Below, piece after piece: positions 23,000 through 63,229 of a stretch of DNA of 64,000 bases. Origin of the DNA: Haliotis rufescens. Its lineage: Eukaryota. The notes beneath the pieces were generated by a model, which saw nothing but the letters and a program-made list of their open reading frames with translations, had not been told where the DNA came from and searched no databases. Position 1 is the stretch's first letter. Every line of letters starts with the position of its first letter. Position numbers and translations under genes: made by a program. Location of the stretch: the NCBI RefSeq assembly GCF_023055435.1, contig NW_025963815.1, positions 558,001 to 622,000 on the forward strand. Reading direction: 5' to 3'.

Positions 23000-23102
23000 T
23001 ATAAATATAGCAGCGTCGCCCGTCCTCGAGTAGAACGTTCAGTTACTCTCAGCCCTTCAACGCCTCGGGACTTCTCCGCAACTTGCTCAACAAATAACCA
23101 TG
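23000..23102 (+). promoter_or_regulatory. Putative TATA box and ATG-only exon 1 of ELC copy 1
   Basis: TATAAATA at 23000-23007, accATG|GTATGT at 23100-23102, CACATGGC E-box at ~22960. Same layout and ~90-100 bp TATA-to-ATG spacing as copies 2-5. Implies intron 23103-29855. Confidence 0.72.
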
Positions 23103-29855: not shown

Positions 29856-30329
29856 CCCGAACTATCACGAGACGAAATTGAGGAGGTCACCGAGGTGTTC
29901 GACCTTTTCGATTTCTGGGATGGTCGTGATGGCGCCGTCGACGCTGCCAAGACCGGCGACATGTTGTACTGTCTGGGCCTCAACCCTACAATGAGCACCA
30001 TCATGAAGAACGGCGGTGTTCAAAAGTTCGGAGAGAAGAACTACAAACTGGAGGAGTTCCTGCCCATCTACCAGACCGTCATGCAGATCAAGGACACAGG
30101 CACCTACGCCGACTTCATGGAGGCTTTCAAGACATTCGACAGGGAGGGCCAGGGCTTCATCTCATCTGCTGAGCTGAGGCACGTTCTGACATCTCTGGGA
30201 GACAGATTGTCAGACAACGACGTTGATGAAATCATCAGGTGCACAGACTTGAGAGAGGATCTGGAGGGCAACGTCAAGTACGAGGACTTCATCTCCAGAG
30301 TCATGGCCGGACCCTACCCAGACAAATAA
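29856..30329 (+). CDS. Myosin essential light chain, copy 1 (divergent isoform), main coding exon; predicted join(23100..23102,29856..30329), 158 aa
   Basis: Acceptor ttattttcAG at 29855, then [30 protein letters not shown]...[13 protein letters not shown]...[11 protein letters not shown]...MAGPYPDK*. Matches molluscan (scallop-type) ELC, including the Ca2+-binding DFWDGRDG loop. Confidence 0.96.
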   Translation, partial: PELSRDEIEEVTEVFDLFDFWDGRDGAVDAAKTGDMLYCLGLNPTMSTIMKNGGVQKFGEKNYKLEEFLPIYQTVMQIKDTGTYADFMEAFKTFDREGQGFISSAELRHVLTSLGDRLSDNDVDEIIRCTDLREDLEGNVKYEDFISRVMAGPYPDK

Positions 30330-31152
30330 ACGCACACATAAAAATAAATCTCCAAACAACGTCTCACAATTTTCATGACTTCCACGTTGGTCTGTTGTAC
30401 AAGGTCAACCAAAGACGTTTCCTTCATCTAAACATTATCAAAAGCTCTGACCCAAGAGCAAAGATTAACCTCCACTCTGTGGCCCGCTTCTGTGCAATGT
30501 CCCTGAGAAGGTCATGTCTTGGACTGAAATTGTGAAACCAATGGCATTTCGTGACACAGGCAATGCTCTTCTGTTCAACCAAACAGCAACGCCGTCTTTC
30601 GGCCCTCAGGTTGTGAGACTCGCGCCTCTTGATGTGATCTATGTGTAACTTGATACAGCTCAGTGTATATACCTCCTAATTTATTTACATGGGAAAATGT
30701 ACATATCTAACATGGCGAAGGTTAGGCGTTTTAAACTGTGCAATGAAATTCCCCGATTAAATATTTAGTCACGAACCATTTTTGTTGTGTTGAGCTCCTC
30801 TCTGGAGAATGTGTGGTCCGCTCATTAAGGCTGTGTGATGCATAATAAAGTCGGTTATCACGAACTCATTACGTATTCGTTATATCCGTAATACAGGAAC
30901 TGTTCTTGCTTTGATGGAAGACCTACTGACAGTAACGCATTCAGACTCAAAGGACGAATACGTTTATCGTGAGTGAGTGAGTGAGTGAGTTAGTATGGTT
31001 TAGCAATATTTCAGCAACATCACGCATTGTACCCATGTGGGGATTCGAACCCGGGACATCGGCGTGACAACATAACGATTAGGCGACTGTTGAACACACA
31101 TCTTTATAGAGATCATCATCGTTAATTAGGTAAAGATTGAATACGATACGAT

Positions 31153-33499
31153 TGTCGATACCTCATATCCACGGGTTTCACCAAAGTGATGAACCTTTGT
31201 ATGTCGATACCATATATCCACGGGTTTCACCAAAGTGATGAACCTTTGTATGTCGATACCATATATCCACGGGTTTCACCAAAGTGGTGAACCTTGGTAT
31301 GTCGATACCATATATCCACGGGTTTCACCAAAGTGATGAACCTTGGTATGTCAATACCATATATCCACGGGTTTCACCAAAGTGGTGAACCTTGGTATGT
31401 CGATACCATATATCCACGGGTTTCACCAAAGTGATGAACCTTGGTATGTCGATACCATATATCCACGGGTTTCACCAAAGTGATGAACCTTGGTATGTCG
31501 ATACCATATATCCACGGGTTTCACCAAAGTGATGAACCTTGGTATGTCGATACCATATATCCACGGGTTTCACCAAAGTGATGAACCTTGGTATGTCGAT
31601 ACCATATATCCACGGGTTTCACCAAAGTGGTGAACCTTGGTATGTCGATACCATATATCCGCGGGTTTAACCAAAGTGATGAACCTTGGTATGTCGATAC
31701 CATATATCCACGGGTTTCACCAAAGTGATGAACCTTTGTATGTCGATACCATATATCCACGGGTTTCACCAAAGTGGTGAACCTTGGTATGTCGATACCA
31801 TATATCCACGGGTTTCACCAAAGTGGTGAACCTTGGTATGTCGATACCATATATCCACGGGTTTCACCAAAGTGATGAACCTTGGTATGTCGATACCATA
31901 TATCCACGGGTTTCACCAAAGTGGTGAACCTTGGTATGTCGATACCATATATCCGCGGGTTTAACCAAAGTGATGAACCTTGGTATGTCGATACCATATA
32001 TCCACGGGTTTCACCAAAGTGATGAACCTTGGTATGTCGATACCATATATCCACGGGTTTCACCAAAGTGGTGAACCTTGGTATGTCGATACCATATATC
32101 CGCGGGTTTAACCAAAGTGATGAACCTTGGTATGTCGATACCATATATCCACGGGTTTCACCAAAGTGATGAACCTTGGTATGTCGATACCTCATATCCA
32201 CAGGTTTCACCAAAGTGATGAACCTTGGTATGTCAATACCTCATATCCACGGGTTTCACCAAAGTGATGAACCTTGGTATGTCAATACCTCATATCCACG
32301 GGTTTCACCAAAGTGATGAACCTCTGTATGTCGATACCATATATCCGCGGGTTTCACCAAAGTGATGAACCTTGGTATGTCGATACCATATATCCACGGG
32401 TTTCACCAAAGTGGTGAACCTTGGTATGTCGATACCATATATCCACGGGTTTCACCAAAGTGGTGAACCTTGGTATGTCGATACCATATATCCACGGGTT
32501 TCACCAAAGTGGTGAACCTTGGTATGTCGATACCATATATCCACGGGTTTCACCAAAGTGGTGAACCTTGGTATGTCGATACCATATATCCGCGGGTTTC
32601 ACCAAAGTGATGAACCTTGGTATGTCGATACCATATATCCGCGGGTTTCACCAAAGTGATGAACCTTGGTATGTCGATACCATATATCCGCGGGTTTCAC
32701 CAAAGTGATGAACCTTGGTATGTCGATACCAGATATCCGCGGGTTTAACCAAAGTGATGAACCTTGGTATGTCGATACCAGATATCCGCGGGTTTAACCA
32801 AAGTGATGAACCTTGGTATGTCGATACCAGATATCCGCGGGTTTAACCAAAGTGATGAACCTTGGTATGTCGATACCAGATATCCGCGGGTTTCACCAAA
32901 GTGATGAACCTTGGTATGTCGATACCAGATATCCGCGGGTTTCACCAAAGTGATGAACCTTGGTATGTCGATACCATATATCCGCGGGTTTCACCAAAGT
33001 GGGGAACCTTGGTATGTCGATACCATATATCCGCGGGTTTCACCAAAGTGGGGAACCTTGGTATGTCGATACCATATATCCGCGGGTTTCACCAAAGTGG
33101 TGAACCTTGGTATGTCGATACCATATATCCGCGGGTTTCACCAAAGTGGGGAACCTTGGTATGTCGATACCATATATCCGCGGGTTTCACCAAAGTGATG
33201 AACCTTGGTATGTCGATACCATATATCCACGGGTTTCACCAAAGTGATGAACCTTGGTATGTCGATACCATATATCCACGGGTTTCACCAAAGTGATGAA
33301 CCTTGGTATGTCGATACCATATATCCGCGGGTTTAACCAAAGTGATGAACCTTGGTATGTCGATACCATATATCCGCGGGTTTCACCAAAGTGATGAACC
33401 TTGGTATGTCGATACCATATATCCGCGGGTTTCACCAATGTGATGAACCTTGGTATGTCGATACCAGATATCCGCGGGTTTAACCAAAGTGGTGAACCT
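31153..33499. repeat. 49-bp satellite (GTCGATACCATATATCCACGGGTTTCACCAAAGTGATGAACCTTGGTAT)n, ~48 units, SINE-derived
   Basis: Read directly; the unit resembles the interior of SINE family D. Confidence 0.96.
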
Positions 33500-34945
33500 G
33501 TAAGACATGCGGCATTATACGTCTTCTGTGATATACACATATAACTGTCCCAAGACGTCAAACCCACCCACTTCATCCTCGACACTTAGTTAAGTACCAC
33601 TGTCCTTATTGCTATTTTAAAGCAAACCCTGGTGGCCAAACCACAACGCGTCCCTGACGCTCCAGTAAACCGAGCAAAGGATTCACTGAAAGAAATACAG
33701 CAGGTGTATATATAACGGGGTAGTTAAGGGTATACATGTATAGTGGAACTCAATAAAGTTTTTTTAATTTGATATAATCCATAAATTTGTGTCCGCGAAG
33801 TCGATTCATTGAATCGTAAGGGAGCCAACGTGACCTTGAGTTACTTTTGGATTACGATTGGGTAATATATATGGTATGGGTCTGAACGAGATACACACTT
33901 ATGAATCCTTGGTTTATGAAACAAAAATTTCGTTCAACACACGTCGTAAGTTGTCATACAGACCCTGAAACAAATATATCCAATACAACCCATGCAAGTC
34001 TATAATAGTTGGCAAGTCAAGATTACTGCATAAATGAAGTTTCTGGGCTCCCCTTTACTTTATTGTATTAAAATAATTTAACAACGTTACTTTTCTGTAA
34101 ATTATTTTCAATTCAATACACACGTCGGTACCATTTTTGAAGCACGTACCTTGTGTTCGATATTGTTGAAATGTTGTTAAAAGAGGCGTAAAATCCCACC
34201 CCCTCACTACATACCACATATGATGTTCACAGCAAGAAAAACTCTTCACAACTGCACGATGAATACTTGCACAAATCTCTAAGGCAATAATTATTAGTTT
34301 AAATCATAATCTCTAGATTATTTAAATGATAAGAATAAGTTGTCTTTATAAAAGACTGGCGTCTTTAAACTCTTACCATCTTGACTTGCCTGTTATAAGG
34401 ATAGAATTAAGTATACATCCATGGTCGTAGCATTGAGTACAGCCTTGGAGCAAGGCTAGGTCGGCCTACCGAAAGTGGGGTTTTATTTTAGTTAAATTAC
34501 TTTGTTGTCATGGGATGCACCGTGAACACTTTGTTTGTTTGTTTGTTTGTTTGTTATCGTCTCACTCAGCAATATTCCAGCTATATGACGACGGTCTGTA
34601 AATAATCGAATCTGACAAGGCAATCCAGAGATTGACATAATGAGCATCTATCTACGCAATTGGGATACGATGACATGCAATCGATCTTAAGTCAGCGAGC
34701 CTGACCACCCGATCCCGTTAGTCGACAAGCATGGGTTGCTGAAGTCCAATGGTAACCCGGATGTTCACGGATAACCTCGCTTTGGACGGTATTTTAGTTA
34801 CGTCACTGCCTGTCAGCCTCATGTGGGAGGAAAGCCGGAAGTGATGCAGGCTGGTGAACAAATACCGCCACACCGTGCCATCGTGACATTGATGTAGGTT
34901 CTATGTATTTCACTTGTTTCTATCCATAACGATCAGATCCAAACA

Positions 34946-35111
34946 GGGGCGGTCGGGTAGCCTAGTGGTTTAAGCGTTCGCTCGTCACGCCGAAGACCCG
35001 GGTTCGATTCCCGACATGGGTACAATGTGTGAAGCCCATTTCTGGTGTCCCCCGCCGTGATATTGCTGGAATAGTGCTAAAAGCGGCGTAAAACCATACT
35101 CACTCACTCAC
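34946..35111 (+). mobile_element. Short tRNA(Asp-like)-headed SINE family C, full length. Other copies at ~13704-13813(+), 13988-14127(-), 20349-20486(+), 22144-22260(+), 30970-31070(-), 41374-41520(-), 52909-53073(-), 53379-53527(+)
   Basis: A-box TAGCCTAGTGG, GTC anticodon-like loop, B-box GGTTCGATTCC, (CACT)n tail, TSD TCAGATCCAAACA at 34933-34945 and 35112-35124. Confidence 0.9.
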
Positions 35112-35232
35112 TCAGATCCAAACAACCGAAACATGTGAAATATACTCCAACACGCTGGACCACAGAGTCAACTGAACAACGAACCACGTACACCTAAGAC
35201 ACCTAAACCATTTGATACCTTCTCTGACGAAA

Positions 35233-35858
35233 GACACACCTCACACACACCCGCCACATAACCTTCACTGCGCATGCACGACACACATCACGTACGACTC
35301 TCACGATGACACCTACACACATGCCGTCCCATACTTCACTTTACTTCACTTCTTTGACAGCAGGAGACACACCTCCCACACCCCCGCCACATAACCTTCA
35401 CTACACTACACACATCATGTACGACTCTCACGATGACACCTACACACATGCCGTCCCATACTTCACTTTACTTCACTTCTTTGACAGCAGGAGACACACC
35501 TCCCACACCCCCGCCACATAACCTTCACCACACTACACACATCATGTACGACTCTCACGATGACACCTACACACATGCCGTCCCATACTTCACTTCTTTG
35601 ACAGCAGGAGACACACCTCCCACACCCCCGCCACATAACCTTCACTACACTACACACATCATGTACGACTCTCACGATGACACCTACATACATGCCGTCC
35701 CATACTTCACTTCTTTGACAGCAGGAGACACACCTCCCACACCCCCGCCACATAACCTTCACTACACTACACACATCATGTACGACTCTCACGATGACAC
35801 CTACACACATGCCGTCCCATACTTCACTTTACTTCACTTCTTTGACAGCAGGAGACAC
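35233..35858. repeat. 117/127-bp tandem repeat, ~5 units
   Basis: Unit GACACACCTCCCACACCCCCGCCACATAACCTTCAC...TTTGACAGCAGGA. Confidence 0.93.
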
Positions 35859-36264
35859 GGAACCAGTGAAGACTTAGTGAAGGAAATACGCATCCTTCAA
35901 TGCAAACAGTCAGACAACTGATTCCCGTCTATAGGCTACTATATATTTTACCTATAGTCCAACGAGTTAAACTAACAGGAAGGAGATGAATGGTGATAGC
36001 CCAAGCTGAGTACACCTTGAATATAGACTTGCACAAGTCTCTAAGGCAAAAAGTATTAGTTTAAGGTATAATTTCTAAATTATGTAAATAATAAGAACTA
36101 GTTAAGGAATACGAAAAAAATAATTGACCCTTGTATGTACGTACAGGTTCGTATTCCTGGGCTTGAAGCACCGACTCGGGACATGGCCGACCGAGACATA
36201 GTTGTGTTGTTTATGGCCGATGAATCAGGGCGTAGATCGAGCTCATTACTCGGGCCGCCTCATT

Positions 36265-36295
<31 letters not shown>

Positions 36296-38794
36296 CCATA
36301 CACGTTTGTATAACATATGTGTGTTTCATTACTAACTTGCCACAGGGGCCTGGGTCTAAACAGGCCCATCTGGCCCTACGGGGTCCCTCGGTGCGGTGAT
36401 TTATGAATTGACTTGATTAAATGTTGCGTTTATGGAGGCATAAAAATATAACCAGGTGTGCGAACTGTAAAATCCTGGAAACGCGTGCAGCCGGATGTTG
36501 CGTTTATAAACTTTATGAACTTTATAAACATCTTGAAGTAAATTCTTATATAACTACGTCAATAACTATAGCTTCACAGACTGTTTATTTAATCATTAAC
36601 GCACACACAAAATGGAAAACAAAACGAAATCAGTGATTTCGTTCAGCACAATAATGCAAGACAAGTCCTGCCCATTTTATTATCAGCCAATCAGGGAACA
36701 GTCGCCCGTTTGGGGGCGCGGCCTAATGTTTATGTTTTTTTATGTTGATGCAATAAAAAATGCTTGGTTAGCCAATCAAATGCCGATTCATATTTTTAGC
36801 TCATATTGTAAGAAAAAGGTTCCTCTGTGTCATTATGTGCAATAGATCAACTCAATTTGTAGCCTGTTACTTCAGGACATTATGGTACGGGGGTGTAATA
36901 TCTTCATTTATCATTTAACTTAAGCATTTATCCATGACATAAGCTTATGACATAAAAACATGTATGTCATACCCCAATGACATAAGTATGCAAATTAGAT
37001 ATGCAAATTAGATAACCGGAAGAGCGAGCGGTTTGATTTGAAACTATATATTATAAGTGAAGTTACACCAGAGATATAATCAGATTACACAGAATCGTTG
37101 TTGTAACCGTTATTAAAGTTTCAATTATTCTGCAAAAGTCTGTTCAAGTATTTTGTTTAAAATAATCCGAGGAACTTTTTTTCTCAGCGAATTGTTTACT
37201 TTGGTTTCGCCAAAGGCTCGGCAAATACCGATTAACTAAGACTCGGTTGATATTTCCCATATTAAAAAACACTCGTGATGAAGAGAGTCAAACCTCAAGC
37301 CATATCATCAACAGAGCAAGAGTGAACCATACAAACTGCGGTAATCAGTTACAGCGAGTTATATTCACACAAGAAAAGATTTGTTTGTTGTTTAACGCCG
37401 CACTCAGCAATATTCCAGCTATATGACGGCGGTCTGTAAATAATCCAGTCTGGACCACACATTCCAGTGATTGACATTATGGGCATCGATTCACGCAATT
37501 GTGATACGATGACATGCATCAACCGAGTCAGCGAGCCTGACAACCCGATCCTGTTAGCCGCCTCTAAACGAAAAGAATAGTCGCCTTTTACGGCAAGCAT
37601 GGGTTGCTGAAGACCTATTCTCCCCCGAATCTTCACAGGTCTTTAATATACCACCCGATCCCGTTAGTTGTCTTTTCCGACAAGCATGGGTTGCTGAAGA
37701 CCAATTCTAACCCGGATATTCATGAGGGCATAATGATGGTATTTATGAATAGGTTTATATGTCGTACTCTCAAAATACATAATATTTATACATATTAAAT
37801 ATGAGAATAAAATATCGCTTCAACAGACCTCTAATAGATCGATGTGTGCCGACACGAATGTTGACACAGTGCCCTTGACATACAAATAACAGAGAAAGTC
37901 GATCAATGTTACCGTTAATTCTGAGACAGTATATTATTGTATTTTCATCTGATTGTTTTTCCTTGTTTATAGTGTCATTAATGTTTATTCGCATATGATA
38001 AAAGACAAATTAGATCTCTTATCGGCAAAATCTACAGGTCGCGAGTTTCAGATTTGTGATGCATGTATACAGTGTAAGAAATACCGTGATAGTTATCGTC
38101 TCGCCAGGTAAGGGCACCCAAAACTAACTATATTCTTATAATTTTCATATATTTACTCAATCCATCATTTAAACATGTATCATAGCGAATGTTTAACCGA
38201 TAAAAACATCCGCAATAGCATTTTTTTAATATGACGGCAAGGGAACAGCGGAGATGAAACGGGTTCACAAATGGTCTAAATAAAATCCAGTGTCGACTCC
38301 CTCTAAGGAAGGTCACTCATGCATATCAATAGGATACTTACCTCATCATCCATCATCTCCCCAGAGTATATGCTTCCATATACCACATCGCTTGACCGTG
38401 ACATCTCCCACGCACGTGCATCCCGTGTAGGTCGATTCGGTTACCTTGGTGACCAGTTCCCTGTAAGGAAGTCCTATTGACTGCATGTAAAACCTTCATC
38501 ACATATTGACACATAAAACGCCAGAAATTAATTAATGTCACAAATATCTGGAGAAATTAGTGGAGACAATTATATGAATGGATCACTGAAAATAAGTTAT
38601 GACGCCAGGTGTTAGCGAAAAGGGTAATATGTCCTGCTTTACATGTAGAACCCACCACTCACACAATTTGAGGGTAAAGTAGGTGTTTGTTGTCTAACTC
38701 CGCACAGCAATACTCCTGCCATAGATTGCGGTCTGTAAACAATCGAGGCTTACTTATATGTCCAAGCTGACATTGTTTCAGAGGATAGTGCAAG

Positions 38795-39069
38795 TTTGTT
38801 TGTTTTTTTAATTTTGTTATTTAACACCGCACTCGGCTATATTCCAGCTATATGACGGCGGTCTGTAAATAATCGAGTCTGGACCAGACAATCCAGTGAT
38901 TGACATCATGAGCATCGATCCACGCAATTGGGAATCATTGACATGCATCAACCAAGTCCGCGAGCCTGACCACCCGATCCCGTTAGTCGCCTCTTACGAC
39001 AAGCATAGTCGCTTTTTACGGCAAGCATGGGTTGCTGAAGACCTATTCTAACCCGGATCTTCACGGGTT
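38795..39069 (-). mobile_element. SINE-like family A (~260 bp, non-tRNA head), representative copy. Others at ~20-243(-), 2229-2505(-), 14380-14505(+), 16437-16702(-), 21023-21237(-), 27237-27775(+, split), 34531-34771(-), 37380-37720(-), 40580-40940(-), 43811-44056(+), 54699-54880(+), 59146-59372(+)
   Basis: Shared 5' end ACCCGTGAAGATCCGGG, shared body, and tail GCTGGAATATTGCTGAGTGCGGCGTTAAAC(AAAC)n. Confidence 0.88.
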
Positions 39070-40017
39070 CTCAATATTACTGCAGCATCTGGACAGCTGT
39101 ATGATCCATCTCTTGTTATTACTACACATGGTCTTTTGCCACACGTTAACCTCACAGTGACGTAGATGATACCATTGCTTAGTTTGCAAAACCAATAGAG
39201 TCTTCGGATTAACCTCACAAGACATGTTTGAGTGATGGTCATACAAAAACTTAGTCAAAACACATGATTCTTTCCACAATAATTAATAGTAAATAGAATC
39301 GGAAAAACAATTCTATAATCATAAGGAATATTAGATTGCACGATTCCGAGCATGTGTTTATGAATAACTATCAAATAGGGATGATACCTTGTGTTCGCGA
39401 AAAGGCGAATGTATGCTATCACAAACACATACAAATCACAAACACATACAAATCAAAGTCCATTTTAAACCTGAAAAGGTACAGGTCGTTGGGCTTAGAT
39501 CGTTTTGTGGCACCAGGCCCAGATTTCCCATATTAATAATTTAATATGTATCTATTATTTACTTATTTCTCCCATAAAATGGAAAATCCATCTTTACATT
39601 TAACAGCAAGAATTATTTTTTTATTACTCGCTAACTATAAAAAAACCACAATACATCATATGTTAATAATTTTTATTTTCATTGACATTCTGACTTTCCA
39701 GTGTATCAGCGGCTACATACTAACATGGCCAGCTTTAAGTTGAGGAAGGTGGTATAGTTTCTATACAGTTATCTACACTTTGATAAAGATAATTTCATGT
39801 GTATGATATTATAGTACCATAGTTTGAAAATAGGATTTAAATTGGATTTTAAATAATTACTTTTCTTCCGGTATTATGTATGTTTGGTCAACATTGCTTG
39901 GAAGAGGAACTGAAATATGTCATTGATTTGAGCGCCTGTTCGCATTGGCGTCCGGTTTCTGGTCCAGTTGTAAGTGTCTTTCATTTTAAGTGTTTATCAG
40001 CATTGGGAGAACATTGT

Positions 40018-40491
40018 CTATTTATCTGGGTAGGGTCCGGCCATGACCTTGGAGATGAAGTCCTCGTACTTGACGTTGCCCTCCAGATCCTCTCTCAAGT
40101 CTGTGCACTTGATGATGTCGTCCATCTGGGTGTCGGTCAGTCTGTCTCCCAGAGATGTCAGAACGTGCCTCAGCTCAGCAGATGAGATGAAGCCTTGGCC
40201 CTCCCTGTCGAATGTCTTGAAAGCCTCCATGAAGTCGGCGTAGGTGCCTGTGTCCTTGATCTGCATGACGGTCTGGTAGATGGGCAGGAACTCCTCCAGT
40301 TTGTAGTTCTTCTCTCCAAACTTCTCCACACCTCCGTTCTTCATGATGGTGGTCATGGTAGGGTTGAGGCCCAGACAGTACAACATGTCGCCGGTCTTGG
40401 CAGCGTCGACGGCGCCATCACGACCATCCCAGAAATCGAAAAGGTCGAACACCTCGGTGACCTCCTCAATTTCATCCTTTGATAGCTGAGG
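40018..40491 (-). CDS. Myosin essential light chain, copy 2, main coding exon; complement(join(40018..40491,42737..42739))
   Basis: Acceptor tttgtgtttcAG, then [11 protein letters not shown]...GPYPDK*; intact 474-bp exon. Confidence 0.96.
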
Positions 40492-42736
40492 CTGAAACAC
40501 AAATGTATTCAGTAAGAGTGTATCAACACTCAGTCAACAACAAATCACAAAGATGATACATATCATCATGTTCGATCTTGTTTGTTTGTTTGTATATTTC
40601 CTGTTTAACGCCGCACGATCCCAGCAATATCACAGCTATATGATGGCGGTTTGTAAACAATCGAGTATGGACAAGATAATCCAGTGATTAACATCATGAG
40701 CATCGATCTACGCAAAACGGATACGATGACATGCATCAACCAAGTCAGCGAGCCTGACCACCCGATCCCGCAAGTCGCTTCTTACGACAAGCATAGTCGC
40801 CTTTTACGGCATGGGTTGCTGAAGACCTGTTATACCCCGGATCTTCACAGATCTTTAATATACCACCCGATCCCGTTAGTTGTCTTTTCCGACAAGCATG
40901 GGTTGCTGAAGACCAATTCTAACCCGGATATTCATGAGGGCATAATGATGGTATTTATGAATAGGTTTATATGTCGTACTCTCAAAATACATAATATTTA
41001 ACCATATTAAATATAAGAATATGATATCGCTTCAACAGACCTCTAATAGATCGATGTGTGCCGAAACGAATGTTGACACAGTGCCCTTGACACTGGTGGA
41101 CGCTGGTGTAGTTATGTATAATATGTTTTGCCGATCTTCATAAAGTAATTATTTATCATCTACATTTGAATTAGTTGCGCAATCGGACTTATGTCTGTGA
41201 AAAACACGTGATAGTAAACTGCCTGGCAAACGAAAGACATACACCTATGTTTGATGGTGGCTAAAGCTGAAACATTCAAGAAATGGTTATTCGATGGTGA
41301 CGTATTTGATACGGGTATCACAGCTGTGTTTCGCACCTACGTTTGCAGTGTTTCGGCGACCGTTTTCAGCATGGTGAGTGAGTGAGTAAGTAAGTATGGT
41401 TTTACGCCGCTTTGAGCAGTATTCAGCAATATCACAGCGGAGGACACCAGAAATGGGCTTCACACACATTGTACCCAATGGAACCCGGGTCTTCGGCGTG
41501 ACGAGAGAACGCTTTACCCCATCGACCTTTTCATCTCGAAACATTCTGATATGTTTTGTAATGTTTTAGTCAAATCCAATTATCAAGCGTATACTTCAAA
41601 GTTTATTTCAGAAGAAAGGCCATTGGCCCAGGGGGGGGTAAATATAAAAAAACAATTTTGAAACAGATGTGCGTTTTGTCTAACAAATAGAGAGTTGTAT
41701 ATAAACTTTGCACAATTAATCAACATCAATTGCTTATTGCATGACACTAGAGAGTACATTTTTCTTAAACATGGGTTATGACAATACTATTTTAGGAAAT
41801 ATATGTTTCTTAAATGCTTATAATATGGACATACTAACATGAAATGGAACTCATCTTCAACAGCTGGCACGTCACAATAATTACAAAGTCTTTGAGAATA
41901 TTCCACACCACAGCATTAGTGACAATCGCTGTGACAATCAGCCTTGTCAATCGCTGAAGCATATACCAGTGACTGAATGAGTGTAGGCTACCGGCGGGTG
42001 GTTCGATTGATGGTCTACAGAATACACTGTGGCCAAACAGCGATGAAATAGAGGAATACAGAGTGCATATTGTTTTCCATCGCTTTTAGCAATATTTCAG
42101 TAAGATTACAGCTGAGGACACAAGAAGTGGACATCGATTTAACTTTGTCGAGAATGGAACCCGGGTGCTCGGTGCTTTAATGCTAATGCTTTGACCACCA
42201 GGCTACCATCCCTTAAGTGAATACTGAGGGCCAATACACGCAGACATTCATTGAAAGAAATTGGATTGTCTGGTCCACACTCGATTATTTACAGACCGCC
42301 GTCATATAGAAAGCCATATAAACAACAAACAAACAAACATTAATACTGTTAGATGAACGGTCATGTTTTCCCTTTGTCTCATATATATGCTAGCCTTGCT
42401 CCAAGGCTGTACTGAAAGAAAGGTCAATGGATGTGTAGTAATTCTATCCTTCTTATAGACAAGTCTAGATATGTGGACAGTATAACTTGTTCTTATTATT
42501 TACATTTGCTAGAAATTATGATTTAAACTAATAAGTATTGACTTCGAGACTTGTGCAAGTCTTCCTCTATGACTACAGTCTACACTTCTCCTGCGGCACG
42601 ATTGACATACATGTATTTTCTTCAATCAATCTAGATAACCAACAGCAAGTCTATCCAGCTGTGTTCCCCCAAAGCATTATACATTTAGAGGTCAAGTGTG
42701 TATTTTGTAAGTTGGAACAGTAAGTAGTAAACTTAC

Positions 42737-56253: not shown

Positions 56254-57134
56254 GGGTTACAGGCCGGCAAAGCCACATTTCGAAAATAGATAGCCCAAAT
56301 TGATGTGGCTCTCGCGGCAATGGTTATGGTTGCGTGATTGTATAATGTGACTCTCGCGGCTATGCTGTCAAAACATGCTTTGTGATTCTAACAGGTTACC
56401 GTATATAACAAAACAAGTCTTGTTTTCTCATTTTTTATTCAACAAGGATAACAGTAACATATTCATCAAAACTTTACATTGATGAATATGAATAGCATAT
56501 GAATAGCATAATGGATTTTAGGTCATTACTGCAGAAGAAAGGTGGCCGCCCACGTGGTCAGCATATTCCATCTCACTCAGGTGTTGGTTCAGGAGCTGGA
56601 TCTTGAGGGACGCAATACGTGCATCGATTGCCTTGTACTTCTTTCTTCGTGAAGGTTCTGACCACTGGTGAGAGAGTCTCAGGACTGTAACCACTTTGAG
56701 TGACTGCTCTCGCTGAAATAGCTTCACTACCTCGTAGATGGTCGGGTGGCACTTCTTGGCAAGCTCCCTTAGTTCGTCCCCCACCCACTCTTGGCATTCT
56801 TTCCAAATTTCAAAATTACTATATAAGCAACCCCTAAAGCCCCCCTCCTGGGTTGCACAAACTCACTTTCCCCTTTTTGGAAACACATTAAATGGCCTGG
56901 CCGGGCCCGTGTGCGACATACGCTTGCAGTCGGAAAGCGCACGTTAAATCTCCAATATAAGTAAGTAAGTAAGTAACACCACGCTTAGTAATTTAAATGT
57001 GGGACACTCATTTAAAGGTATCGGTAATCGGATTAAGAAATTACCCGCTAGATTAGGTGAAATGCACTCAGCTGAAAATGTGGCTCTACCGGCAATAGCC
57101 ATTTCTGAAATGTGGCTCTCCCGGCTAGACACCC
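56254..57134 (-). mobile_element. Non-autonomous DNA transposon with MULE-like transposase C-terminal remnant
   Basis: ORF 56518-56784 (HPTIYEVVKLFQREQ...RRKKYKAIDARI). Imperfect terminal inverted repeats (GCCGGxxAGCCACATTTC) flanked by a CTAATT direct repeat. Confidence 0.55.
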
Positions 57135-58199
57135 CTAATTGCCAGCAACTAAGTCAACGATCCAACCCAATCAGCCACCGACGTTAAAAAAATGAAATTC
57201 CGACAACTGGTAGTGTAGATCACGTACATTGTGTACCCCTCTGACAAGTGTAGCTTGTGACGAGCTTATGACGTAATATAATAACGCGCACATTCCAGGA
57301 AACATGCAGTGTTCATGTACCGTTTGTGAGAAATCCTTTTCGATGAATGTAAGAATGACATAAAATGTAGGTAATCATTCGTGTTTGTTGGGATGGCGGA
57401 TATCCTGTAACAGGAATAAGCACTATGGTGCCCGCCAACATTCGCGAAATACAAGTACATAATAAATGATCTCTTCTATTTATGCTACAAGAAACCACTC
57501 CAGCAAATGTTTGTGCATCTAGTAGAGTGATTAACACGAGAAGCTGAGATTAGCCCAAGAAGCAGACACCGTGCCACATCGGGCGTGGGCGGGAGGTAGG
57601 AATGATGTAGGTACACACGAAGAGAGAACCTAATGAGCCCCAGCCCTGACACAGACCTCGAACAGGAAACTATTTATATACGTTTTGAGTGAGTGATTAT
57701 TGCTTAACGTCACATCAGCAAGTAATATTCGTAGACCAATGCGCATCATAGCTTGAAGATCTCCATTGCGAGCTGTAAGACAAAGTTTGACCTCGATGGG
57801 TACAATAGGACTTGGTTACTTTTGTTCACTCACTCACTCACTCACTCAGCACAACTGACAAAATTCAATTCATGCTGTGGTATAAACAGATAGCAAATGT
57901 TTTAATGCTAATCGTCTTTATTCTACACTGGTTCCACAACTACATACTACATACTACAGCTACATACTACAGTGGTATATATTTACATGGATGGGAAACT
58001 ATCTGCCCATTGCAGGCATCTTCTATGTACAACAGAAAACCTGTGCATCTACAGTGGAAGTGGACAAGAGTCTGTTTGTTTGTCCAGCCATGTCATTGTA
58101 GATCAGTGCTAAATATGTCAATGCTTTTGTAGAAGTCACACATATGTCTCTTTCTTCGCACGTCATTGCGAGGTCTTTAATATCTAGAGGACAGAGTGT

Positions 58200-58673
58200 C
58201 TATTTGTCTGGGTAGGGTCCGGCCATGACCTTGGAGATGAAGTCCTCGTACTTGACGTTGCCCTCCAGATCCTCTCTCAAGTCGGTGCACTTGATGATGT
58301 CGTCCATCTGGGTGTCGGTCAGTCTGTCTCCCAGAGATGTCAGAACGTGCCTCAGCTCAGCAGATGAGATGAAGCCCTGGCCCTCCCTGTCGAATGTCTT
58401 GAAAGCCTCCATGAAGTCGGCGTAGGTGCCTGTGTCCTTGATCTGCATGACGGTCTGGTAGATGGGCAGGAACTCCTCCAGTTTGTAGTTCTTCTCTCCA
58501 AACTTCTCCACACCGCCGTTCTTCATGATGGTGGTCATGGTAGGGTTGAGGCCCAGACAGTACAACATGTCGCCGGTCTTGGCAGCGTCGACGGCGCCAT
58601 CACGACCATCCCAGAAATCGAAAAGATCGAACACCTCGGTGACCTCCTCGATTTCATCCTTTGATAGTTGAGG
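58200..58673 (-). CDS. Myosin essential light chain, copy 4, main coding exon; complement(join(58200..58673,59464..59466))
   Basis: Protein identical to copies 2, 3 and 5; AATAAA on the minus strand at 57917-57922. Confidence 0.96.
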
Positions 58674-58754
58674 CTGAAACACAAAACACAGATATCAGCA
58701 ACAAAGCATTGAACATCCACTGAAGAACATGTCCCGTTTATGAAGTTCAAGGGG

Positions 58755-58996
58755 GTGAGTGAGTGAGTTATATTCCAGTTATATCATGGCGTGTCAGCCG
58801 AATGACGGAGAAAGTGATGCAGGTCTCAGACGTTTATCACTTTGGTGAAACCCACGAGCACGGGTATGGTGCTGACAAACCTTGAAACGTAATTGGAGCG
58901 AAACGGGAATCGAACCCACAAACATAGATTTCTGGAATGCCTAAGGGACGCAACTCTGCACAGCGAATTACAACGCCTTAGACGACTGGGGCACCT
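58755..58996 (-). mobile_element. SINE family D copy in the copy 4 intron
   Basis: Aligns to 581-858. Confidence 0.82.
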
Positions 58997-59463
58997 TTTG
59001 ACTCAAGTCTGCAGTGTGTGATGAATAACTTTGGCTGCAGTAAGTTAACAAAATTTATAGCAGTAACTGATCAACAATATAAACGATGATAACAGCAATG
59101 TTCAGTATATGAAGATGATTAGGTAATTTTAAACAGAAGTAGAGAGACCCGTGAAGGTCCGGCAGAGAATTGGTCTTCAGATACCCATGCTTGTAAGAGG
59201 CGATTAACAGGATTGGGTGATCAGGCTCGCTGACTTGGTTGATGCATGTCATCGTATCCCAACTGCGTAGATAGATGCTCTTGATGTCAATCACTGGATT
59301 GCCTGTCCAGCAGATTATTTACAGACCGCCGTCTTAGAGCTGGAATATTGCTGAGTGTGGCATTAAACAAACAGACGATAGTGATGGTGTGTGCTGATTG
59401 TAGACGTCTATAGAAACAACACTCCACAGACTCTGATCCAGCCTGGATCTGTTGTAAACTCAC

Positions 59464-59620
59464 CATGTTTCTAGCAGGGTCTGCTTGAGTCTGACAACCG
59501 AAAAACTGAGGGCAGGTGCTTGTTGAGTGATGACTGTTAACCGTTGTCCGAGCTTCTTATACCCAGCGGACACACACCCCCACCACCCCTCCCCCTATTC
59601 CCTCGCTGACGAGCCATGTG
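59464..59620 (-). promoter_or_regulatory. ATG-only exon 1, TATA box and E-box of ELC copy 4
   Basis: aacATG|GTGAGT (59464-59466), GGGTATAAGAA (TATA 59554-59561), CACATGGCTC (core 59615-59620). Intron 58674-59463. Confidence 0.85.
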
Positions 59621-60279
59621 TCCGGCGCGTGGTCCCGACCCCCGTTCATCCCCCCGCACCCCTGGGGTGACCCAGCAGGCGTATAGAGGCACATGCTGGT
59701 ATCGGAGGCTCATTACGATTAGATTATATAAGAACTGAGGACAGTGGAGCTTCTAATGGATGGACGATGTACACTAGATGCCCTTACGTTATGCTGATGA
59801 GAAAAGGATGATGTTAGTTATGTAATCGTTGTTCACAAACATGCGTAGTATTAGTTTGTAATAGCCTATAACCATTTACCAGTTTACTATTCTCGGGAAC
59901 TTTCTAAATGTGTAAACATACACATCTCTATCTGTTGATCATAAATAACTGACAAAGACATCGAAGCTTCACAATGTATTTTTTAACTGTTTGATAATAC
60001 GACATGCTATAAACCATAAGTTGTTAGCCATATGCATTTTTTTATTCCTGAATGAATATCATGATATACAATGACTACGTAATTGTGTTTTAAGAACCCC
60101 GGTCGTAACAGAGTTAGTGTCGGGGTGTAATTTATTGATCACTTGATCCACAGGTTATATCAATTATTAACGGGAAGAAAACGCTACGTTTTACCTTACT
60201 TGATAACATAAACTTGAAAATCAAAACACCAGCAATAATAAGAGTGTGAAATGGTTTCATTGATGGCTTTATTCAGAGA

Positions 60280-60780
60280 GACAAAACACTCTCCACAAGA
60301 CTGTATAAAAAGAGGGATGACTTCAACTTAATATTCAATTTCTCTTATGTCGAGCAATATTCCTGCAGCTCCATCCTTTGATTTCAAAACTAAATTTCAC
60401 AACTTTTGAGGGACAATCGAGCATGTTTTTACTAAGAAGGTTTCAAAGAGCGTCATACTAATTTTGCTCAGAAGTTGCTTGATCAAGGTTACAACATTCA
60501 AGGCCTCAGTAAAGCTTTCAAAAAGTATTATGGTGAAGATGATGAGCACAATTCCAAATTTGATGCATCAGTGACCAAAATGATGTCCGATACAATTCGT
60601 TATTTTGACTTGAACCATATGTTCCCGTGTGATGTTTTTTTCATGTGAACAATTGACTTGCCTTTGCATGTGTTTGTGACGGATGCCACCAGGATACGCC
60701 CACTTTCTCGCCAATATCAAGTATCATCAGAAAATTAATTATTCATAAACACATGCTCATCATATCGTCGGACGCACTAT
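60280..60780 (+). mobile_element. Second copy of the same RT fragment, between divergent ELC copies 4 and 5
   Basis: CTCTCCACAAGACTGTAT...CAATATTCCTGCAGCTCC...GCATCAGTGACCAAAATGATGTCCGAT is shared with 44620-44920. Confidence 0.65.
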
Positions 60781-61638
60781 GGAATCCTTAAGATTAAAGA
60801 TTCCTGAAGATTATGGAAATGTTTTGACGCTTATTATGATTAATCACAAAACCAAACAAACTTCAGTTGCTGTAGTTGTAGATGCGGTCTTCTGCAAGAT
60901 GACCTCACTGTTATTTTAAAAAATAATGTACACAATTCAAGATCTATCTCCGTGTAGCTGTCAACAAACATCCGACAAACAAATGATAAATTTGTTGTGA
61001 CTAAATACTTGATTATTATCCCCAGTTCCTGGATCCTGGGAAGGTCGTATAAAGAAAAGAAGAGAAAATTATATGCGTTTAGTGATGATGTAATATTTCT
61101 GAAGATATGAAAAAAGATATTTCAATCGAACTGAAATAATAACGGGGAATAACACTTTATTCTGGAATGTCATTATGATTTTCGACGAAGATTAGTAAAA
61201 AGATACACAATAAATCTAGCATATGACATTTATTGTCAAGTGACATGATTATTTCGTCTTGTGACTTGAAAAGAGGACAGTTTCAATCATGAAGATATCA
61301 GTATTATGTGGGTTTTTGGATAATATTAATCTGCTTTTATTTATTTACAAGTATTAATATGCAACGCCATGCGGCAGAAAACGAGCAAAATGCCCTAGAA
61401 AAGCCCCAGTACATCATCGTCACAAATTATCGCATAATTAACATGTGTCATCGAAGTTTAAGAATTGTAAACATTTTTCAACAAATTCTTTGTCAAAGTT
61501 AACTCGATATCGGATATAATGTACACATAAGCATGGAGGAGATGGGGAAATAGTTTATCATGATGCAATGGGCGTGGCTTGGAAGCTACCCAAGTGTATC
61601 TTGTCAGTACCCCCGCGGTGCGGTGAGGTCACTGGGGT

Positions 61639-61729
61639 TACAAATACGACCGGACAGCATCCTGACTTCACAACCCTCCCTGCAGCCGCTGAATCACTTG
61701 GTCTGTCCAGCTCCTCAAGTCGCATCATG
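61639..61729 (+). promoter_or_regulatory. ATG-only exon 1 and non-canonical TATA of ELC copy 5
   Basis: atcATG|GTAAGA (61727-61729), TACAAATA 88 bp upstream, TGATGCAAT at 61561-61569. Intron 61730-62344. Confidence 0.7.
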
Positions 61730-61954
61730 GTAAGAATAACTGACGCCACCTTTATTTTACTTCTGGTCTACATGCAGAGTTGCGTCCCTTATCCTGCCAG
61801 GATATTCTGGTCGTGTGTTCGAATCATAGGTCATCCCCGACAATACTCGACAAGCCATCGTCTTGCTGTTGTGTCTACGAACTGACATGCCACTCACTAA
61901 CTCACTCACTGATTTATCATATTTGCTCTCATACGCCGATAATAGGTTCGACGC

Positions 61955-61958
<4 letters not shown>

Positions 61959-62040
<82 letters not shown>
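61959..62040. repeat. (CA)n microsatellite in the copy 5 intron
   Basis: Read directly. Confidence 0.98.
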
Positions 62041-62042
<2 letters not shown>

Positions 62043-62344
62043 ATCCTGGCACCTATTGAGGATGTAGATTGTCGGAATATTGTTGATGAAAGCGTACACT
62101 CACTACCTCATTCGCTATTAGATTTCACTTTCCAATGCTAATTGGAAAAACAAGAATTCAGAAAGCATATTTAAGAAATTGAAATTTTAATGTATTTTTT
62201 TCCTTGAATGGTTTAAGAAAAATGACGTTGTTTGAACTGGGATACGTAACGTAACCTGCCAGAGTTGTGCACAGTTTAGACTGAATATATAATCATTCTT
62301 TGTTCCTATATTTGTATTCTGATAACGTGTCATTTGTGTTTCAG

Positions 62345-62818
62345 CCTCAACTATCAAAAGACGAAATCGAGGAGGTCACCGAGGTGTTCGATCTTTTCGA
62401 TTTCTGGGATGGTCGTGATGGCGCCGTCGACGCTGCCAAGACCGGCGACATGTTGTACTGTCTGGGCCTCAACCCTACCATGACCACCATCATGAAGAAC
62501 GGAGGTGTGGAGAAGTTCGGAGAGAAGAACTACAAACTGGAGGAGTTCCTGCCCATCTACCAGACCGTCATGCAGATCAAGGACACAGGCACCTACGCCG
62601 ACTTCATGGAGGCTTTCAAGACATTCGACAGGGAAGGCCAGGGCTTCATCTCATCTGCTGAGCTGAGGCACGTTCTGACATCTCTGGGAGACAGACTGAC
62701 CGACACCCAGATGGACGACATCATCAAGTGCACCGACTTGAGAGAGGATCTGGAGGGCAACGTCAAGTACGAGGACTTCATCTCCAAGGTCATGGCCGGA
62801 CCCTACCCAGACAAATAG
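62345..62818 (+). CDS. Myosin essential light chain, copy 5, main coding exon; join(61727..61729,62345..62818)
   Basis: Protein identical to copies 2-4; 3'UTR alignable with copy 4; AATAAA at 63127-63132. Confidence 0.96.
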
Positions 62819-63229
62819 ACACTCTGTCCTCTAGATATTAAAGACCTCGCAATGACGTGCGAAGAAAGAGACATTTGTGTAACTGTTACAAAAGCATTGA
62901 CATATTTAACACTGATCTACAGTGACATGGCTGAACAAACAAATAGACTCTTGTTCACTTCCACTGTAGATGCACAGGTTGTCTGTTGTACATAGAAGAT
63001 GTAAAGGCTGTAAAGGGTACTTAGTTTCTCTTTCCCCGTGTACATATACACCACTGTAGTATTTATGTCGATACATTTAGTCGTAATGTACTATGTAGTA
63101 TTTTGTAGTCACTAGAACCAGCGTACAATAAAAATGATTAGCATGAAAATGTTTACTGTCTTTATAATAACAAAATCTAAGAAGTCTGCTGATATGAACA
63201 CGTACATGCGTGGATCAGGTTAACCAATT

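What the first reader, a model, noticed from the sequence alone, without database searches (positions are those of the whole stretch)
29856..62818. Exon-limited concerted evolution with mosaic synonymous variants
Coding exons are nearly identical at synonymous sites; copy 1 30030-30206 matches copy 4 exactly over ~177 bp. Similarity among copies 2-5 stops ~12-16 nt into the intron (tttgtgtttcag). The few variants conflict with any single tree: copies 1+2 share GAC-CTT and Thr ACA; 1+4 share AAC-GGC; 1+5 share GAC-GAA and TTC-GGA; 3+5 share Lys AAA; 4+5 share Ile ATC. This patchwork is what repeated gene conversion (possibly cDNA-templated) among old duplicates would produce.
Basis: partly seen in the sequence, partly recalled or inferred. 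Interest (0 to 1): 0.8.

Follow-up and report, generated by a model that had tools for sequence, protein, structure and literature searches.

The report
Gene conversion among abalone myosin light-chain genes
Five neighbouring abalone genes for a muscle protein (myosin essential light chain), plus four more elsewhere in the genome, keep almost identical coding sequences while their promoters, introns and most flanks have drifted apart, because they repeatedly copy patches of sequence into one another; this is a clear but textbook kind of gene-family evolution.

Summary
The window (probably Haliotis rufescens, contig C37) holds five myosin essential light chain (ELC) genes. Each has its own promoter, a tiny exon 1 ending in ATG, one intron, and a 474-nt exon holding the whole mature protein. 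Copies 2-5 differ only at 5-10 synonymous sites. Copy 1 differs at 28-30 sites, and it matches copy 4 exactly over 30030-30206.

Four more copies lie outside the window: three "long" ELCs on C12 and one frameshifted copy on C556.

Gene conversion among old duplicates is well supported.
- Synonymous divergence is saturated next to isoform-specific residues (dS 0.9 to saturated) and near zero elsewhere (0.02-0.10), with sharp boundaries (P about 1e-8).
- Where introns can be aligned, they differ by 0.32-0.34 against a dS of 0.02-0.05.
- Eight of ten informative site pairs fail the four-gamete test.
- The paralogue types and the individual copies exist in other Haliotis species.
- H. asinina long and short types share one species-specific residue.

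Codon bias alone is excluded.

The mosaic within copies 2-5 is not significant by itself. A cDNA template is not supported.

This is a new example of a known process. The scan also noted this same stretch in another reading (s1-813595).

The parts
23000..23102 (+). Copy 1 promoter TATA (23000-23009) and exon 1 (5'UTR ending in the start codon at 23100-23102, donor ATG|gtatgt)
   Evidence: A contig of run X15 carries ...CAACAAATAACCATG joined directly to CCCG..., the start of copy 1's main exon. The 26-mer occurs once in the window, at 23077-23102. Sequence read.
29856..30329 (+). Copy 1 main exon: the complete mature ELC (157 codons plus TAA). This is the distinct isoform (PELSR..., SDNDVDEIIR). 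Its four divergence islands lie at exon nt 0-17, 132-173, 351-389 and 441-443.
   Evidence: The protein equals P0121, recorded on four contigs including a 55.7-Mb one that carries H. asinina models.
40018..40491 (-). Copy 2 main exon (short type). Its core is closest to the long-type copies L2 and L3 on C12.
42737..42830 (-). Copy 2 inferred exon 1 (ATG at 42739-42737, donor GTAAGT) with a TATA box about 90 nt upstream
   Evidence: Motif and alignment to copy 3 exon 1 (73% over 88 nt). Inferred only; not shown by RNA.
52363..52836 (-). Copy 3 main exon (short type)
53683..53775 (-). Copy 3 inferred exon 1 (ATG at 53685-53683, donor GTAAGT) with a TATA box upstream
   Evidence: The N-terminus of the H. 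cracherodii model P0001 (...DPAISM joined to PQLSK) maps here at 13 of 15 residues.
57860..58199 (-). Copy 4 3'UTR (AATAAA at 57922), homologous to the 3'UTRs of copies 3 and 5 at K2P 0.12
   Evidence: Contig of run X15 at 57876-58173.
58200..58673 (-). Copy 4 main exon (short type)
59464..59560 (-). Copy 4 inferred exon 1 (ATG at 59466-59464, donor GTGAGT) with a TATA box upstream
   Evidence: The N-terminus of the H. cracherodii model P0002 maps to the promoter at 59713-59570.
61640..61729 (+). Copy 5 inferred exon 1 (ATG at 61727-61729, donor GTAAGA)
   Evidence: The N-terminus of the H. cracherodii model P0129 maps to 61563-61622. Inferred only; not shown by RNA.
62345..62818 (+). Copy 5 main exon (short type)
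62819..63160 (+). Copy 5 3'UTR (AATAAA at 63127)
   Evidence: Contigs of run X15 at 62789-62874 and 62845-63122.

Best explanation
These are separate, old, probably linked genes for molluscan myosin essential light chain. Each has its own promoter, an exon 1 made of the 5'UTR plus ATG, one intron, and one large exon.

Their coding sequences are kept nearly identical by recurrent, DNA-templated interlocus (ectopic) gene conversion. During repair, a stretch of tens to several hundred bases of one copy is overwritten from another copy.

Conversion needs local homology. It therefore continues inside the protein-constrained exon, reaching at most 12-32 nt into the intron and, for copies 3-5, through the 3'UTR. 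It has stopped in promoters, exon 1 and introns, which have drifted beyond alignment.

Tracts that would erase isoform-specific residues are removed by selection. Those residues are the four islands of copy 1 and the N- and C-terminal ends of the long type. This leaves islands where synonymous sites are saturated, sitting next to stretches with no differences.

Shown: the pattern of divergence, the age of the copies, and the sharing of variants between types. Inferred: the repair mechanism itself and the role of selection at the islands.
For: 1. Divergence jumps within one exon. Long against short types have 11-12 fixed differences in exon nt 0-44 (6 synonymous, on about 8 synonymous sites). 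They have none in nt 45-457, and total divergence from nt 458 on. Fisher P = 3e-8.

2. Copy 1 against copy 4: 13 of 15 synonymous differences lie in four islands alongside the amino-acid changes. Across copies 2-5, dS is 0.9-1.65 in the islands and 0.026-0.039 elsewhere. P = 2.5e-9.

3. Non-coding parts of the same genes are old.
- Promoters and exon 1 are barely alignable.
- Introns of the short copies do not align.
- In the long cluster, where introns do align, L3 against L1/L2 gives intron K2P 0.32-0.34 and dS 0.02-0.05 (P = 3e-7 to 3e-9).

4. Tree conflict.
- Copy 2's core is 2-3 differences from L2/L3 but 6-9 from copies 3-5.
- L1 shares flanks with L2 but carries short-type alleles at sites 47, 173, 242 and 389.
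- 8 of 10 informative site pairs fail the four-gamete test.
- The Sawyer-type global P is 0.016, with significant fragments for the 1-2 pair and for long-short pairs.

5. Age of the copies.
- The copy-1 type, the short type and the long type all occur in H. cracherodii, H. rubra and H. asinina.
- Copy-specific flanks of copies 3, 4, 5 and X are recognisable in H. cracherodii gene models.
- Contigs of another species (organism B) are collinear across the copy 4-copy 5 spacer at 3.7-5.7% divergence.

6. H. asinina long and short types share TTILKNGG, where all other species and types have TTIMKNGG.

7. Codon freedom. ENC is 37-40, which is only moderate bias. The C605 paralogue uses a different codon at 20 of 43 residues that are identical in amino acid, within the same stretch.
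Against: - No nucleotide-level comparison of orthologous copies across species could be made, so 'paralogues closer than orthologues' rests on a single amino-acid site.
- Within copies 2-5 alone, no fragment is significant, and three of the conflicting sites are CpG transitions that could recur.
- For copies 3-5, dS (0.05-0.06) is only about half the 3'UTR divergence (0.12-0.16; P = 0.05-0.14).
- Organism B's CDS contig differs from copy 5 at only 3 of 408 nt. At least one of these is a paralogue-variable site. This hints that synonymous sites also evolve somewhat more slowly than spacer DNA.
Confidence: 0.85

Rival explanations
1. There is no conversion. The synonymous identity reflects strong selection on codons or on the mRNA sequence of a very highly expressed muscle gene.
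For: - GC3 is 0.73-0.78 and ENC 37-40, which shows some bias.
- ELC contigs are deep in the RNA-like runs.
- Organism B's CDS contig shows few or no species-specific differences, although the spacer differs by about 4.5%.
Against: - In the same exon, synonymous sites are saturated wherever the types differ in protein. These differences are fixed within each type, for example GAG/GAA, TCA/TCC and CTA/CTG.
- The C605 paralogue differs in codon at 47% of the residues with identical amino acids.
- Sharp boundaries and trans-paralogue shared polymorphisms are not expected from selection on codons.
Confidence: 0.04
2. The copies are homogenised from reverse-transcribed mRNA (cDNA-templated conversion). 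This would explain why similarity coincides with the exon.
For: - For copies 4 and 5, homology runs from the splice acceptor to about 35 nt past AATAAA, roughly the transcribed exon.
- The whole family lacks the internal introns that the C605 paralogue has. This is the footprint of an ancestral cDNA-mediated intron loss.
Against: - Homology extends 12-32 nt into the intron, which mRNA lacks.
- Tract ends differ from pair to pair, and many lie inside the exon: nt 45 and 457 for long against short, and patches in copy 1.
- Exon 1 and the 5'UTR, and the 3'UTRs of copies 1 and 2 and of the long type, are not homogenised.
- Intron 1 has never been erased in any copy.
Confidence: 0.07
3. The copies are recent duplicates, or assembly artefacts such as haplotigs or collapsed and duplicated segments. 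Their flanks merely look different because of transposon and satellite turnover.
For: - C37 and C12 are small unplaced contigs.
- TEs and satellites are abundant around the genes.
- L1 and L2 really are a fairly recent whole-gene duplicate (intron K2P 0.07).
Against: - Flanks of C37, C12 and C556 share only the exon and scattered repeats.
- Each copy has its own diverged promoter and exon 1.
- Copy-specific flanks are present in H. cracherodii models.
- Contigs of organism B bridge the exon-intron borders of copies 4 and 5.
- Thirteen DNA runs under the same species label, from five studies, hold 29-84% of the stretch's words.
Confidence: 0.03

Closest known systems
Interlocus gene conversion with selection-protected 'islands of divergence' in duplicated genes (for example GOT1 paralogues of Tigriopus californicus, PMC3728101; theory reviewed in PMC3924837)
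   Same: Old paralogues are kept near-identical over most of the coding sequence. Short islands that carry the functional differences stay diverged, with hitch-hiking synonymous differences. Variants are shared between paralogues.
   Different: Here there are at least nine copies of three isoform types, in two clusters and in both orientations. The protein is a muscle structural protein. Only abstracts and titles of these papers were seen in the search output.
Coding-region-restricted concerted evolution with diverged flanks (mammalian inducible Hsp70 genes, PMC5865164; KRTAP1 genes, bioRxiv 10.1101/282418)
   Same: Coding regions are homogenised by conversion together with purifying selection, while the flanking regions follow orthology.
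   Different: Those families have intronless coding genes. Here one intron sits directly after the ATG and marks the 5' limit of homology. The cross-species flank-versus-CDS contrast was shown in those papers but could not be computed here.
Scallop and squid myosin essential light chain (PDB 1B7T chain Z, 3I5F chain C)
   Same: The match is full length, residue 1 to the last (E = 9e-69). It includes the [12 protein letters not shown] loop of domain I and the ...VMAGPYPDK end.
   Different: This is the protein family, not the evolutionary process. Abalone has expanded it to at least nine near-identical genes, including a long form with a Lys/Pro/Ala-rich N-terminal extension.
cDNA-mediated 'copy correction' proposed for duplicated, highly expressed yeast genes (recalled from memory: Pyne, Skiena and Futcher 2005; not retrieved here)
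   Same: Exons are homogenised while introns are not, in highly expressed genes.
   Different: In abalone the homology enters the intron and tract ends lie within the exon, so an RNA intermediate is not needed. This comparison rests on memory only.

Membership tests
Molluscan myosin essential light chain (EF-hand superfamily) | Full-length sequence homology to structurally solved ELCs | tested here: met
   phmmer against PDB: 1b7t_Z scallop ELC, E = 9.3e-69, query 1-157 against chain 1-156; squid LC-1, E = 3.6e-68.
Molluscan myosin essential light chain (EF-hand superfamily) | EF-hand pair domains | tested here: met
   Pfam EF-hand_7, EF-hand_6 and EF-hand_1 score above their cut-offs for both copy 4 and copy 1.
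Molluscan myosin essential light chain (EF-hand superfamily) | Binds the myosin heavy-chain lever arm; domain I contributes the regulatory Ca2+ site | not testable with these tools
   The only evidence is sequence identity of the [12 protein letters not shown] loop to scallop ELC in the alignment.
Concerted evolution by interlocus gene conversion | Duplicates are older than their coding similarity implies | tested here: met
   - Types are shared by four Haliotis species.
- Copy-specific flanks are recognisable in H. cracherodii models.
- Promoters and introns are unalignable or at K2P 0.32-0.34, against dS 0.02-0.10.
Concerted evolution by interlocus gene conversion | Divergence is heterogeneous along the sequence, with discrete tract boundaries | tested here: met
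   (P = 3e-8 and 2.5e-9).
Concerted evolution by interlocus gene conversion | Statistically significant shared fragments, phylogenetic incompatibility, or polymorphism shared between paralogues | tested here: met
   - Permutation global P = 0.016; fragments are significant for the 1-2 pair and for long-short pairs, but not within copies 2-5.
- 8 of 10 site pairs are incompatible.
- Sites 47, 173 and 389 are polymorphic in both the long and the short group.
Concerted evolution by interlocus gene conversion | Paralogues within a species are more alike than orthologues between species | tested here: inconclusive
   At the protein level there is one site: H. asinina long and short types both have Leu where all other species have Met. 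The contig data are too fragmentary.
cDNA (RNA)-templated gene conversion | Homology ends exactly at exon ends and never includes intron sequence | tested here: not met
   12-16 nt of intron are shared by copies 2-5, and 32 nt by copies 4 and 5. Internal tract ends lie at exon nt 45 and 457 and around the islands of copy 1.
cDNA (RNA)-templated gene conversion | All transcribed parts (5'UTR exon, 3'UTR) are homogenised, or the intron is lost in recipients | tested here: not met
   Exon 1 regions are at most 73% alike or unalignable. The 3'UTRs of copies 1 and 2 and of the long type are unalignable to the others. Intron 1 is present in every copy.

The most novel reading that the evidence does not exclude
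Part of the homogenisation is RNA-templated. The family began with a cDNA-mediated loss of all internal introns. Later germline cDNA copies of this abundant mRNA could have repeatedly patched exon 2, from the acceptor to the poly(A) site, in copies 3-5. This would be an animal example of ongoing reverse-transcript-mediated 'copy correction'.
Probability: 0.08. Interest if true: 0.6.

Novelty: new member of a known kind. Interest (0 to 1): 0.35.

Why it matters
Practical point: trees or dS-based dating of these abalone ELC genes, and of similar muscle gene families, will badly underestimate duplication ages. Short-read mapping, expression counts and variant calls over these exons will also mix nine loci.

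Biological point: this is a clean natural example of how conversion and selection together partition one exon into homogenised stretches and protected isoform-specific islands. It pinpoints the residues that probably distinguish three ELC isoforms:
- copy-1 type: aa 2, 5, 47, 56, 119-126, 128 and 148
- long type: the N-terminal Lys/Pro/Ala extension and the C-terminus

It does not reveal a new mechanism.

Tried and rejected
- The repeat finder on the whole window was swamped by a 22-nt satellite and gave nothing on the genes. I used BLAST in scripts instead.
The planned retrieval of H. cracherodii, H. rubra and H. asinina loci, and therefore the CDS-versus-flank trees, could not be done. I did not try to get round this.
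- The single read-laying run was dominated by transposon pile-ups at 58735-59482 and 60231-60791. Most joints and loose ends were cut from the output, so exon 1 of copies 4 and 5 was not confirmed by RNA. Only a few cross-species differences were visible.
- The blocks shared upstream of copies 2, 3 and 4 turned out to be a SINE-like repeat, not exon 1.
- The haplotig explanation for C12 and C556 was rejected.
- Codon bias as the sole cause was rejected.
- Literature searches found no paper on gene conversion in myosin light chain genes or on abalone ELC gene structure.
- The ATG of exon 1 was never joined to exon 2 in any query.
- The 100-N gap in C556 was left as it is.


Full report
**What is there.** BLAST of the exon at 29856-30329 against the window finds five copies:
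- c1 29856-30329 (+)
- c2 40018-40491 (-)
- c3 52363-52836 (-)
- c4 58200-58673 (-)
- c5 62345-62818 (+)

Each copy is an open 157-codon frame plus a stop. It starts directly behind a splice acceptor (...tttcag|CC). The peptide matches scallop striated-muscle myosin essential light chain from its first to its last residue (1b7t_Z, E = 9e-69) and carries EF-hand domains. Only the initiator Met is therefore missing from this exon.

A contig of run X15 reads ...CAACAAATAACCATG followed by CCCG..., the beginning of c1's exon. That 26-mer occurs once in the window, at 23077-23102, behind a TATA box and in front of gtatgt. So c1 has an exon 1 made of 5'UTR plus ATG, and a 6.75-kb intron.

Equivalent ATG|GTRAGT exons, each with a TATA box 85-95 nt upstream, lie upstream of c2 (42739), c3 (53685), c4 (59466) and c5 (61727). 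These are inferred from sequence. For c3 there is added support from a H. cracherodii gene model whose N-terminus ends ...AISM at this spot. As the operators asked, I searched only the exon-2 translation and never joined exon 1 to it.

**Whose genome.** The best protein hits are Haliotis proteins. The recorded contig length of two H. rufescens proteins (927,538) equals that of contig C12 of this assembly. The genome is very probably red abalone.

**The family is larger than the window.** A search of the genome finds four more copies.
- Three lie on C12 (L1, L2, L3). They are a 'long' ELC. Exon 2 starts 55 nt earlier and encodes ASKTAKSTKPTKAAAPQIK..., and the C-terminus is PPA or PPT instead of PYPDK.
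- One lies on C556 (copy X). It has five one-base indels in homopolymer runs.
- A distant paralogue lies on C605.

The flanks of the C12 and C556 copies share nothing with C37 except the exon and scattered repeats. They are therefore not haplotigs.

**Check of the observation.**
- c2-c5 differ at 5-10 sites, all synonymous.
- c1 differs at 28-30 sites (11 amino-acid changes).
- c1 and c4 are identical over 30030-30206.
- Homology among c2-c5 ends 12-16 nt into the intron, and at 32 nt for c4 and c5.
- On the 3' side, c1, c2, X and the long copies lose homology within 2-30 nt of the stop codon.
- c3, c4 and c5 stay alignable at K2P 0.12-0.16, with indels. For c4 and c5 this runs to about 35 nt past AATAAA, and for c3 to about 220 nt, where its satellite begins.

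**Are the duplicates old?** Yes.
- Promoters and exon 1 are at best 73% alike over 88 nt (c2 against c3) and otherwise undetectable. Introns share only a SINE-like element.
- The c1-type, short-type and long-type proteins all exist in H. cracherodii, H. rubra and H. asinina.
- The spurious N-terminal extensions of four H. cracherodii gene models translate copy-specific non-coding DNA of c3, c4, c5 and X at 86-90% amino-acid identity.
- Contigs of another species (organism B, run X14) lie collinearly across the whole c4-c5 spacer and bridge both exon-intron borders, with 3.7-5.7% substitutions plus indels.

**Is it conversion or constraint?** The decisive evidence lies inside the exon.

Long against short copies show three zones:
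- exon nt 0-44: 11-12 fixed differences. Six of these are fixed synonymous differences; each long-short pair counts 7-9 synonymous differences on about 8.3 synonymous sites, which is saturated.
- nt 45-457: no fixed difference at all.
- from nt 458 on: complete divergence.

The Fisher test gives P = 3e-8.

For c1 against the short copies, 11-14 of the 14-16 synonymous differences sit in four islands together with all the amino-acid changes. There dS is 0.9-1.65, against 0.026-0.039 elsewhere (c1 against c4: P = 2.5e-9).

If synonymous sites were held by codon selection, they would not be saturated in the segments adjoining the homogenised stretches of the same mRNA.

Two controls agree.
- ENC is 37-40, which is only moderate bias.
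- The C605 paralogue uses a different codon at 20 of 43 residues with the same amino acid, within exon nt 24-179.

Where introns can be aligned, in the long cluster, L3 against L1/L2 has intron K2P 0.32-0.34 and 3'-flank K2P 0.32-0.33 against dS 0.02-0.05 (P = 3e-7 to 3e-9). L1 against L2 is a recent whole-gene duplicate (intron K2P 0.07).

**Mosaicism.**
- In the core, c2 is 2-3 differences from L2/L3 but 6-9 from c3-c5.
- L1 shares flanks with L2 but carries the short-type alleles at sites 47, 173, 242 and 389.
- Sites 47, 173 and 389 are polymorphic with the same two alleles in both the long and the short group.
- 8 of 10 pairs of informative core sites fail the four-gamete test.
- My Sawyer-type permutation test gives a global P of 0.016. 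Fragments are significant for the c1-c2 pair and for several long-short pairs.
- No fragment is significant for any pair within c2-c5, where there are too few differences.
- Sites 17, 23 and 173 are CpG transitions and could recur.

**Across species.** Only protein data were available. In H. asinina the long type (P0127) and the short type (P0133, P0124) both read TTILKNGG. Every long and short copy of H. rufescens, H. cracherodii and H. rubra reads TTIMKNGG, as do the c1 type, the Gigantopelta outgroup protein and (at this one position) nothing else differs except the distant paralogue P0004, which reads TIKSNGG. A derived residue shared by different paralogue types of one species is what concerted evolution predicts. 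It is a single site.

In one search the CDS contig of organism B has depth 193, against about 30 for single-copy flanks. It differs from c5 at only 3 of 408 nt, and at least one of these is the paralogue-variable site 47. Some slowing of synonymous change relative to the spacer therefore cannot be excluded.

**Mechanism.** Tract ends differ from pair to pair:
- c4 and c5: -32 nt to about +340 nt past the stop
- c2 against the other short copies: -14 to +3
- X: about -13 to +30
- long against short: nt 45 to 457
- c1: patches within the exon

They include intron bases. Exon 1 and the 5'UTR are never homogenised, and no copy has lost intron 1. This fits ordinary DNA-templated ectopic conversion, limited by residual homology and filtered by selection. 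It does not fit a cDNA template.

An RNA step probably did occur once, at the origin of the family. The C605 paralogue has internal introns (exon borders near residues 10 and 61), whereas all nine copies have none after the ATG intron.

**Standing.** Conversion confined to coding sequence, with protected islands of divergence, is well documented in other families (PMC3728101, PMC5865164, PMC3924837, bioRxiv 10.1101/282418). I found nothing on myosin light chains or on abalone. This is a well-supported new example of a known process.

Noticed in passing
G000:C556:57583561-57584035 (locus L005), with a 100-N gap at C556:57582398-57582497: A sixth short-type copy (X) is 98% identical to copy 4 but has five one-base indels, all in homopolymer runs, and a tag acceptor. 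It is either a pseudogene still being homogenised or a stretch with local assembly errors. A scaffold gap lies 1.06 kb upstream. H. cracherodii accession numbers run X, c5, c4, c3 consecutively, so contig C37 probably belongs in that gap.
   Followed up: partly
G000:C12:365114-365567 (+), 370624-371077 (-), 380195-380648 (-) (loci L006-L008): Three 'long' ELC genes encode an N-terminal Lys/Pro/Ala-rich extension (MASKTAKSTKPTKAAAPQIK...) and a different C-terminus. From memory, the extension is reminiscent of the actin-binding extension of vertebrate A1-type essential light chains. The form is present in four Haliotis species.
   Followed up: partly
G000:C605:30275581-30278651 (locus L010): The more distant ELC paralogue (82% protein identity) is split by internal introns. 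All nine copies of the family studied here have the whole mature CDS in one exon. This suggests an ancestral cDNA-mediated loss of all introns except the first.
   Followed up: partly
window 59570-59713 (-), 61563-61622 (+), 53683-53727 (-); C556 about 57583494-57583556: Several RefSeq models of H. cracherodii ELC genes (P0002, P0129, P0001, P0130) carry N-terminal extensions that translate promoter, 5'UTR or intron DNA. One model seems to use the GT of the TATA box as its splice donor. The true start is most likely the ATG that ends exon 1.
   Followed up: partly
window 2681 to about 5900, and 48479-52362: There are two long arrays of roughly 22-nt tandem repeats. The second begins inside the 3'UTR of copy 3 and cuts short its homology with copies 4 and 5.
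   Followed up: no
window 58735-59482, 60231-60791, 43868-44004, and the intron of copy 3: A SINE-like element (...CAATCCAGTGATTGACATCATGAGCATCGA...GGGATACGATGACATGCATCAACCAAGTC...) sits in the introns of copies 2, 3 and 4. It is extremely abundant, with summed contig depths of 1e5-1e6 in the DNA run of a related species.
   Followed up: no
G000:C223:37.83-38.44 Mb: A search with the ELC paralogue also hit about 40 EF-hand open frames (30-51% identity) packed into 0.6 Mb. This looks like a large tandem array of calmodulin-like genes.
   Followed up: no
window 22900-23010, 42830-42900, 53780-53900, 59560-59640: The otherwise diverged promoters of copies 1-4 share a short CACATGGC(C)TC motif and G-rich tracts upstream of the TATA box. 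These are candidate muscle-specific control elements.
   Followed up: no
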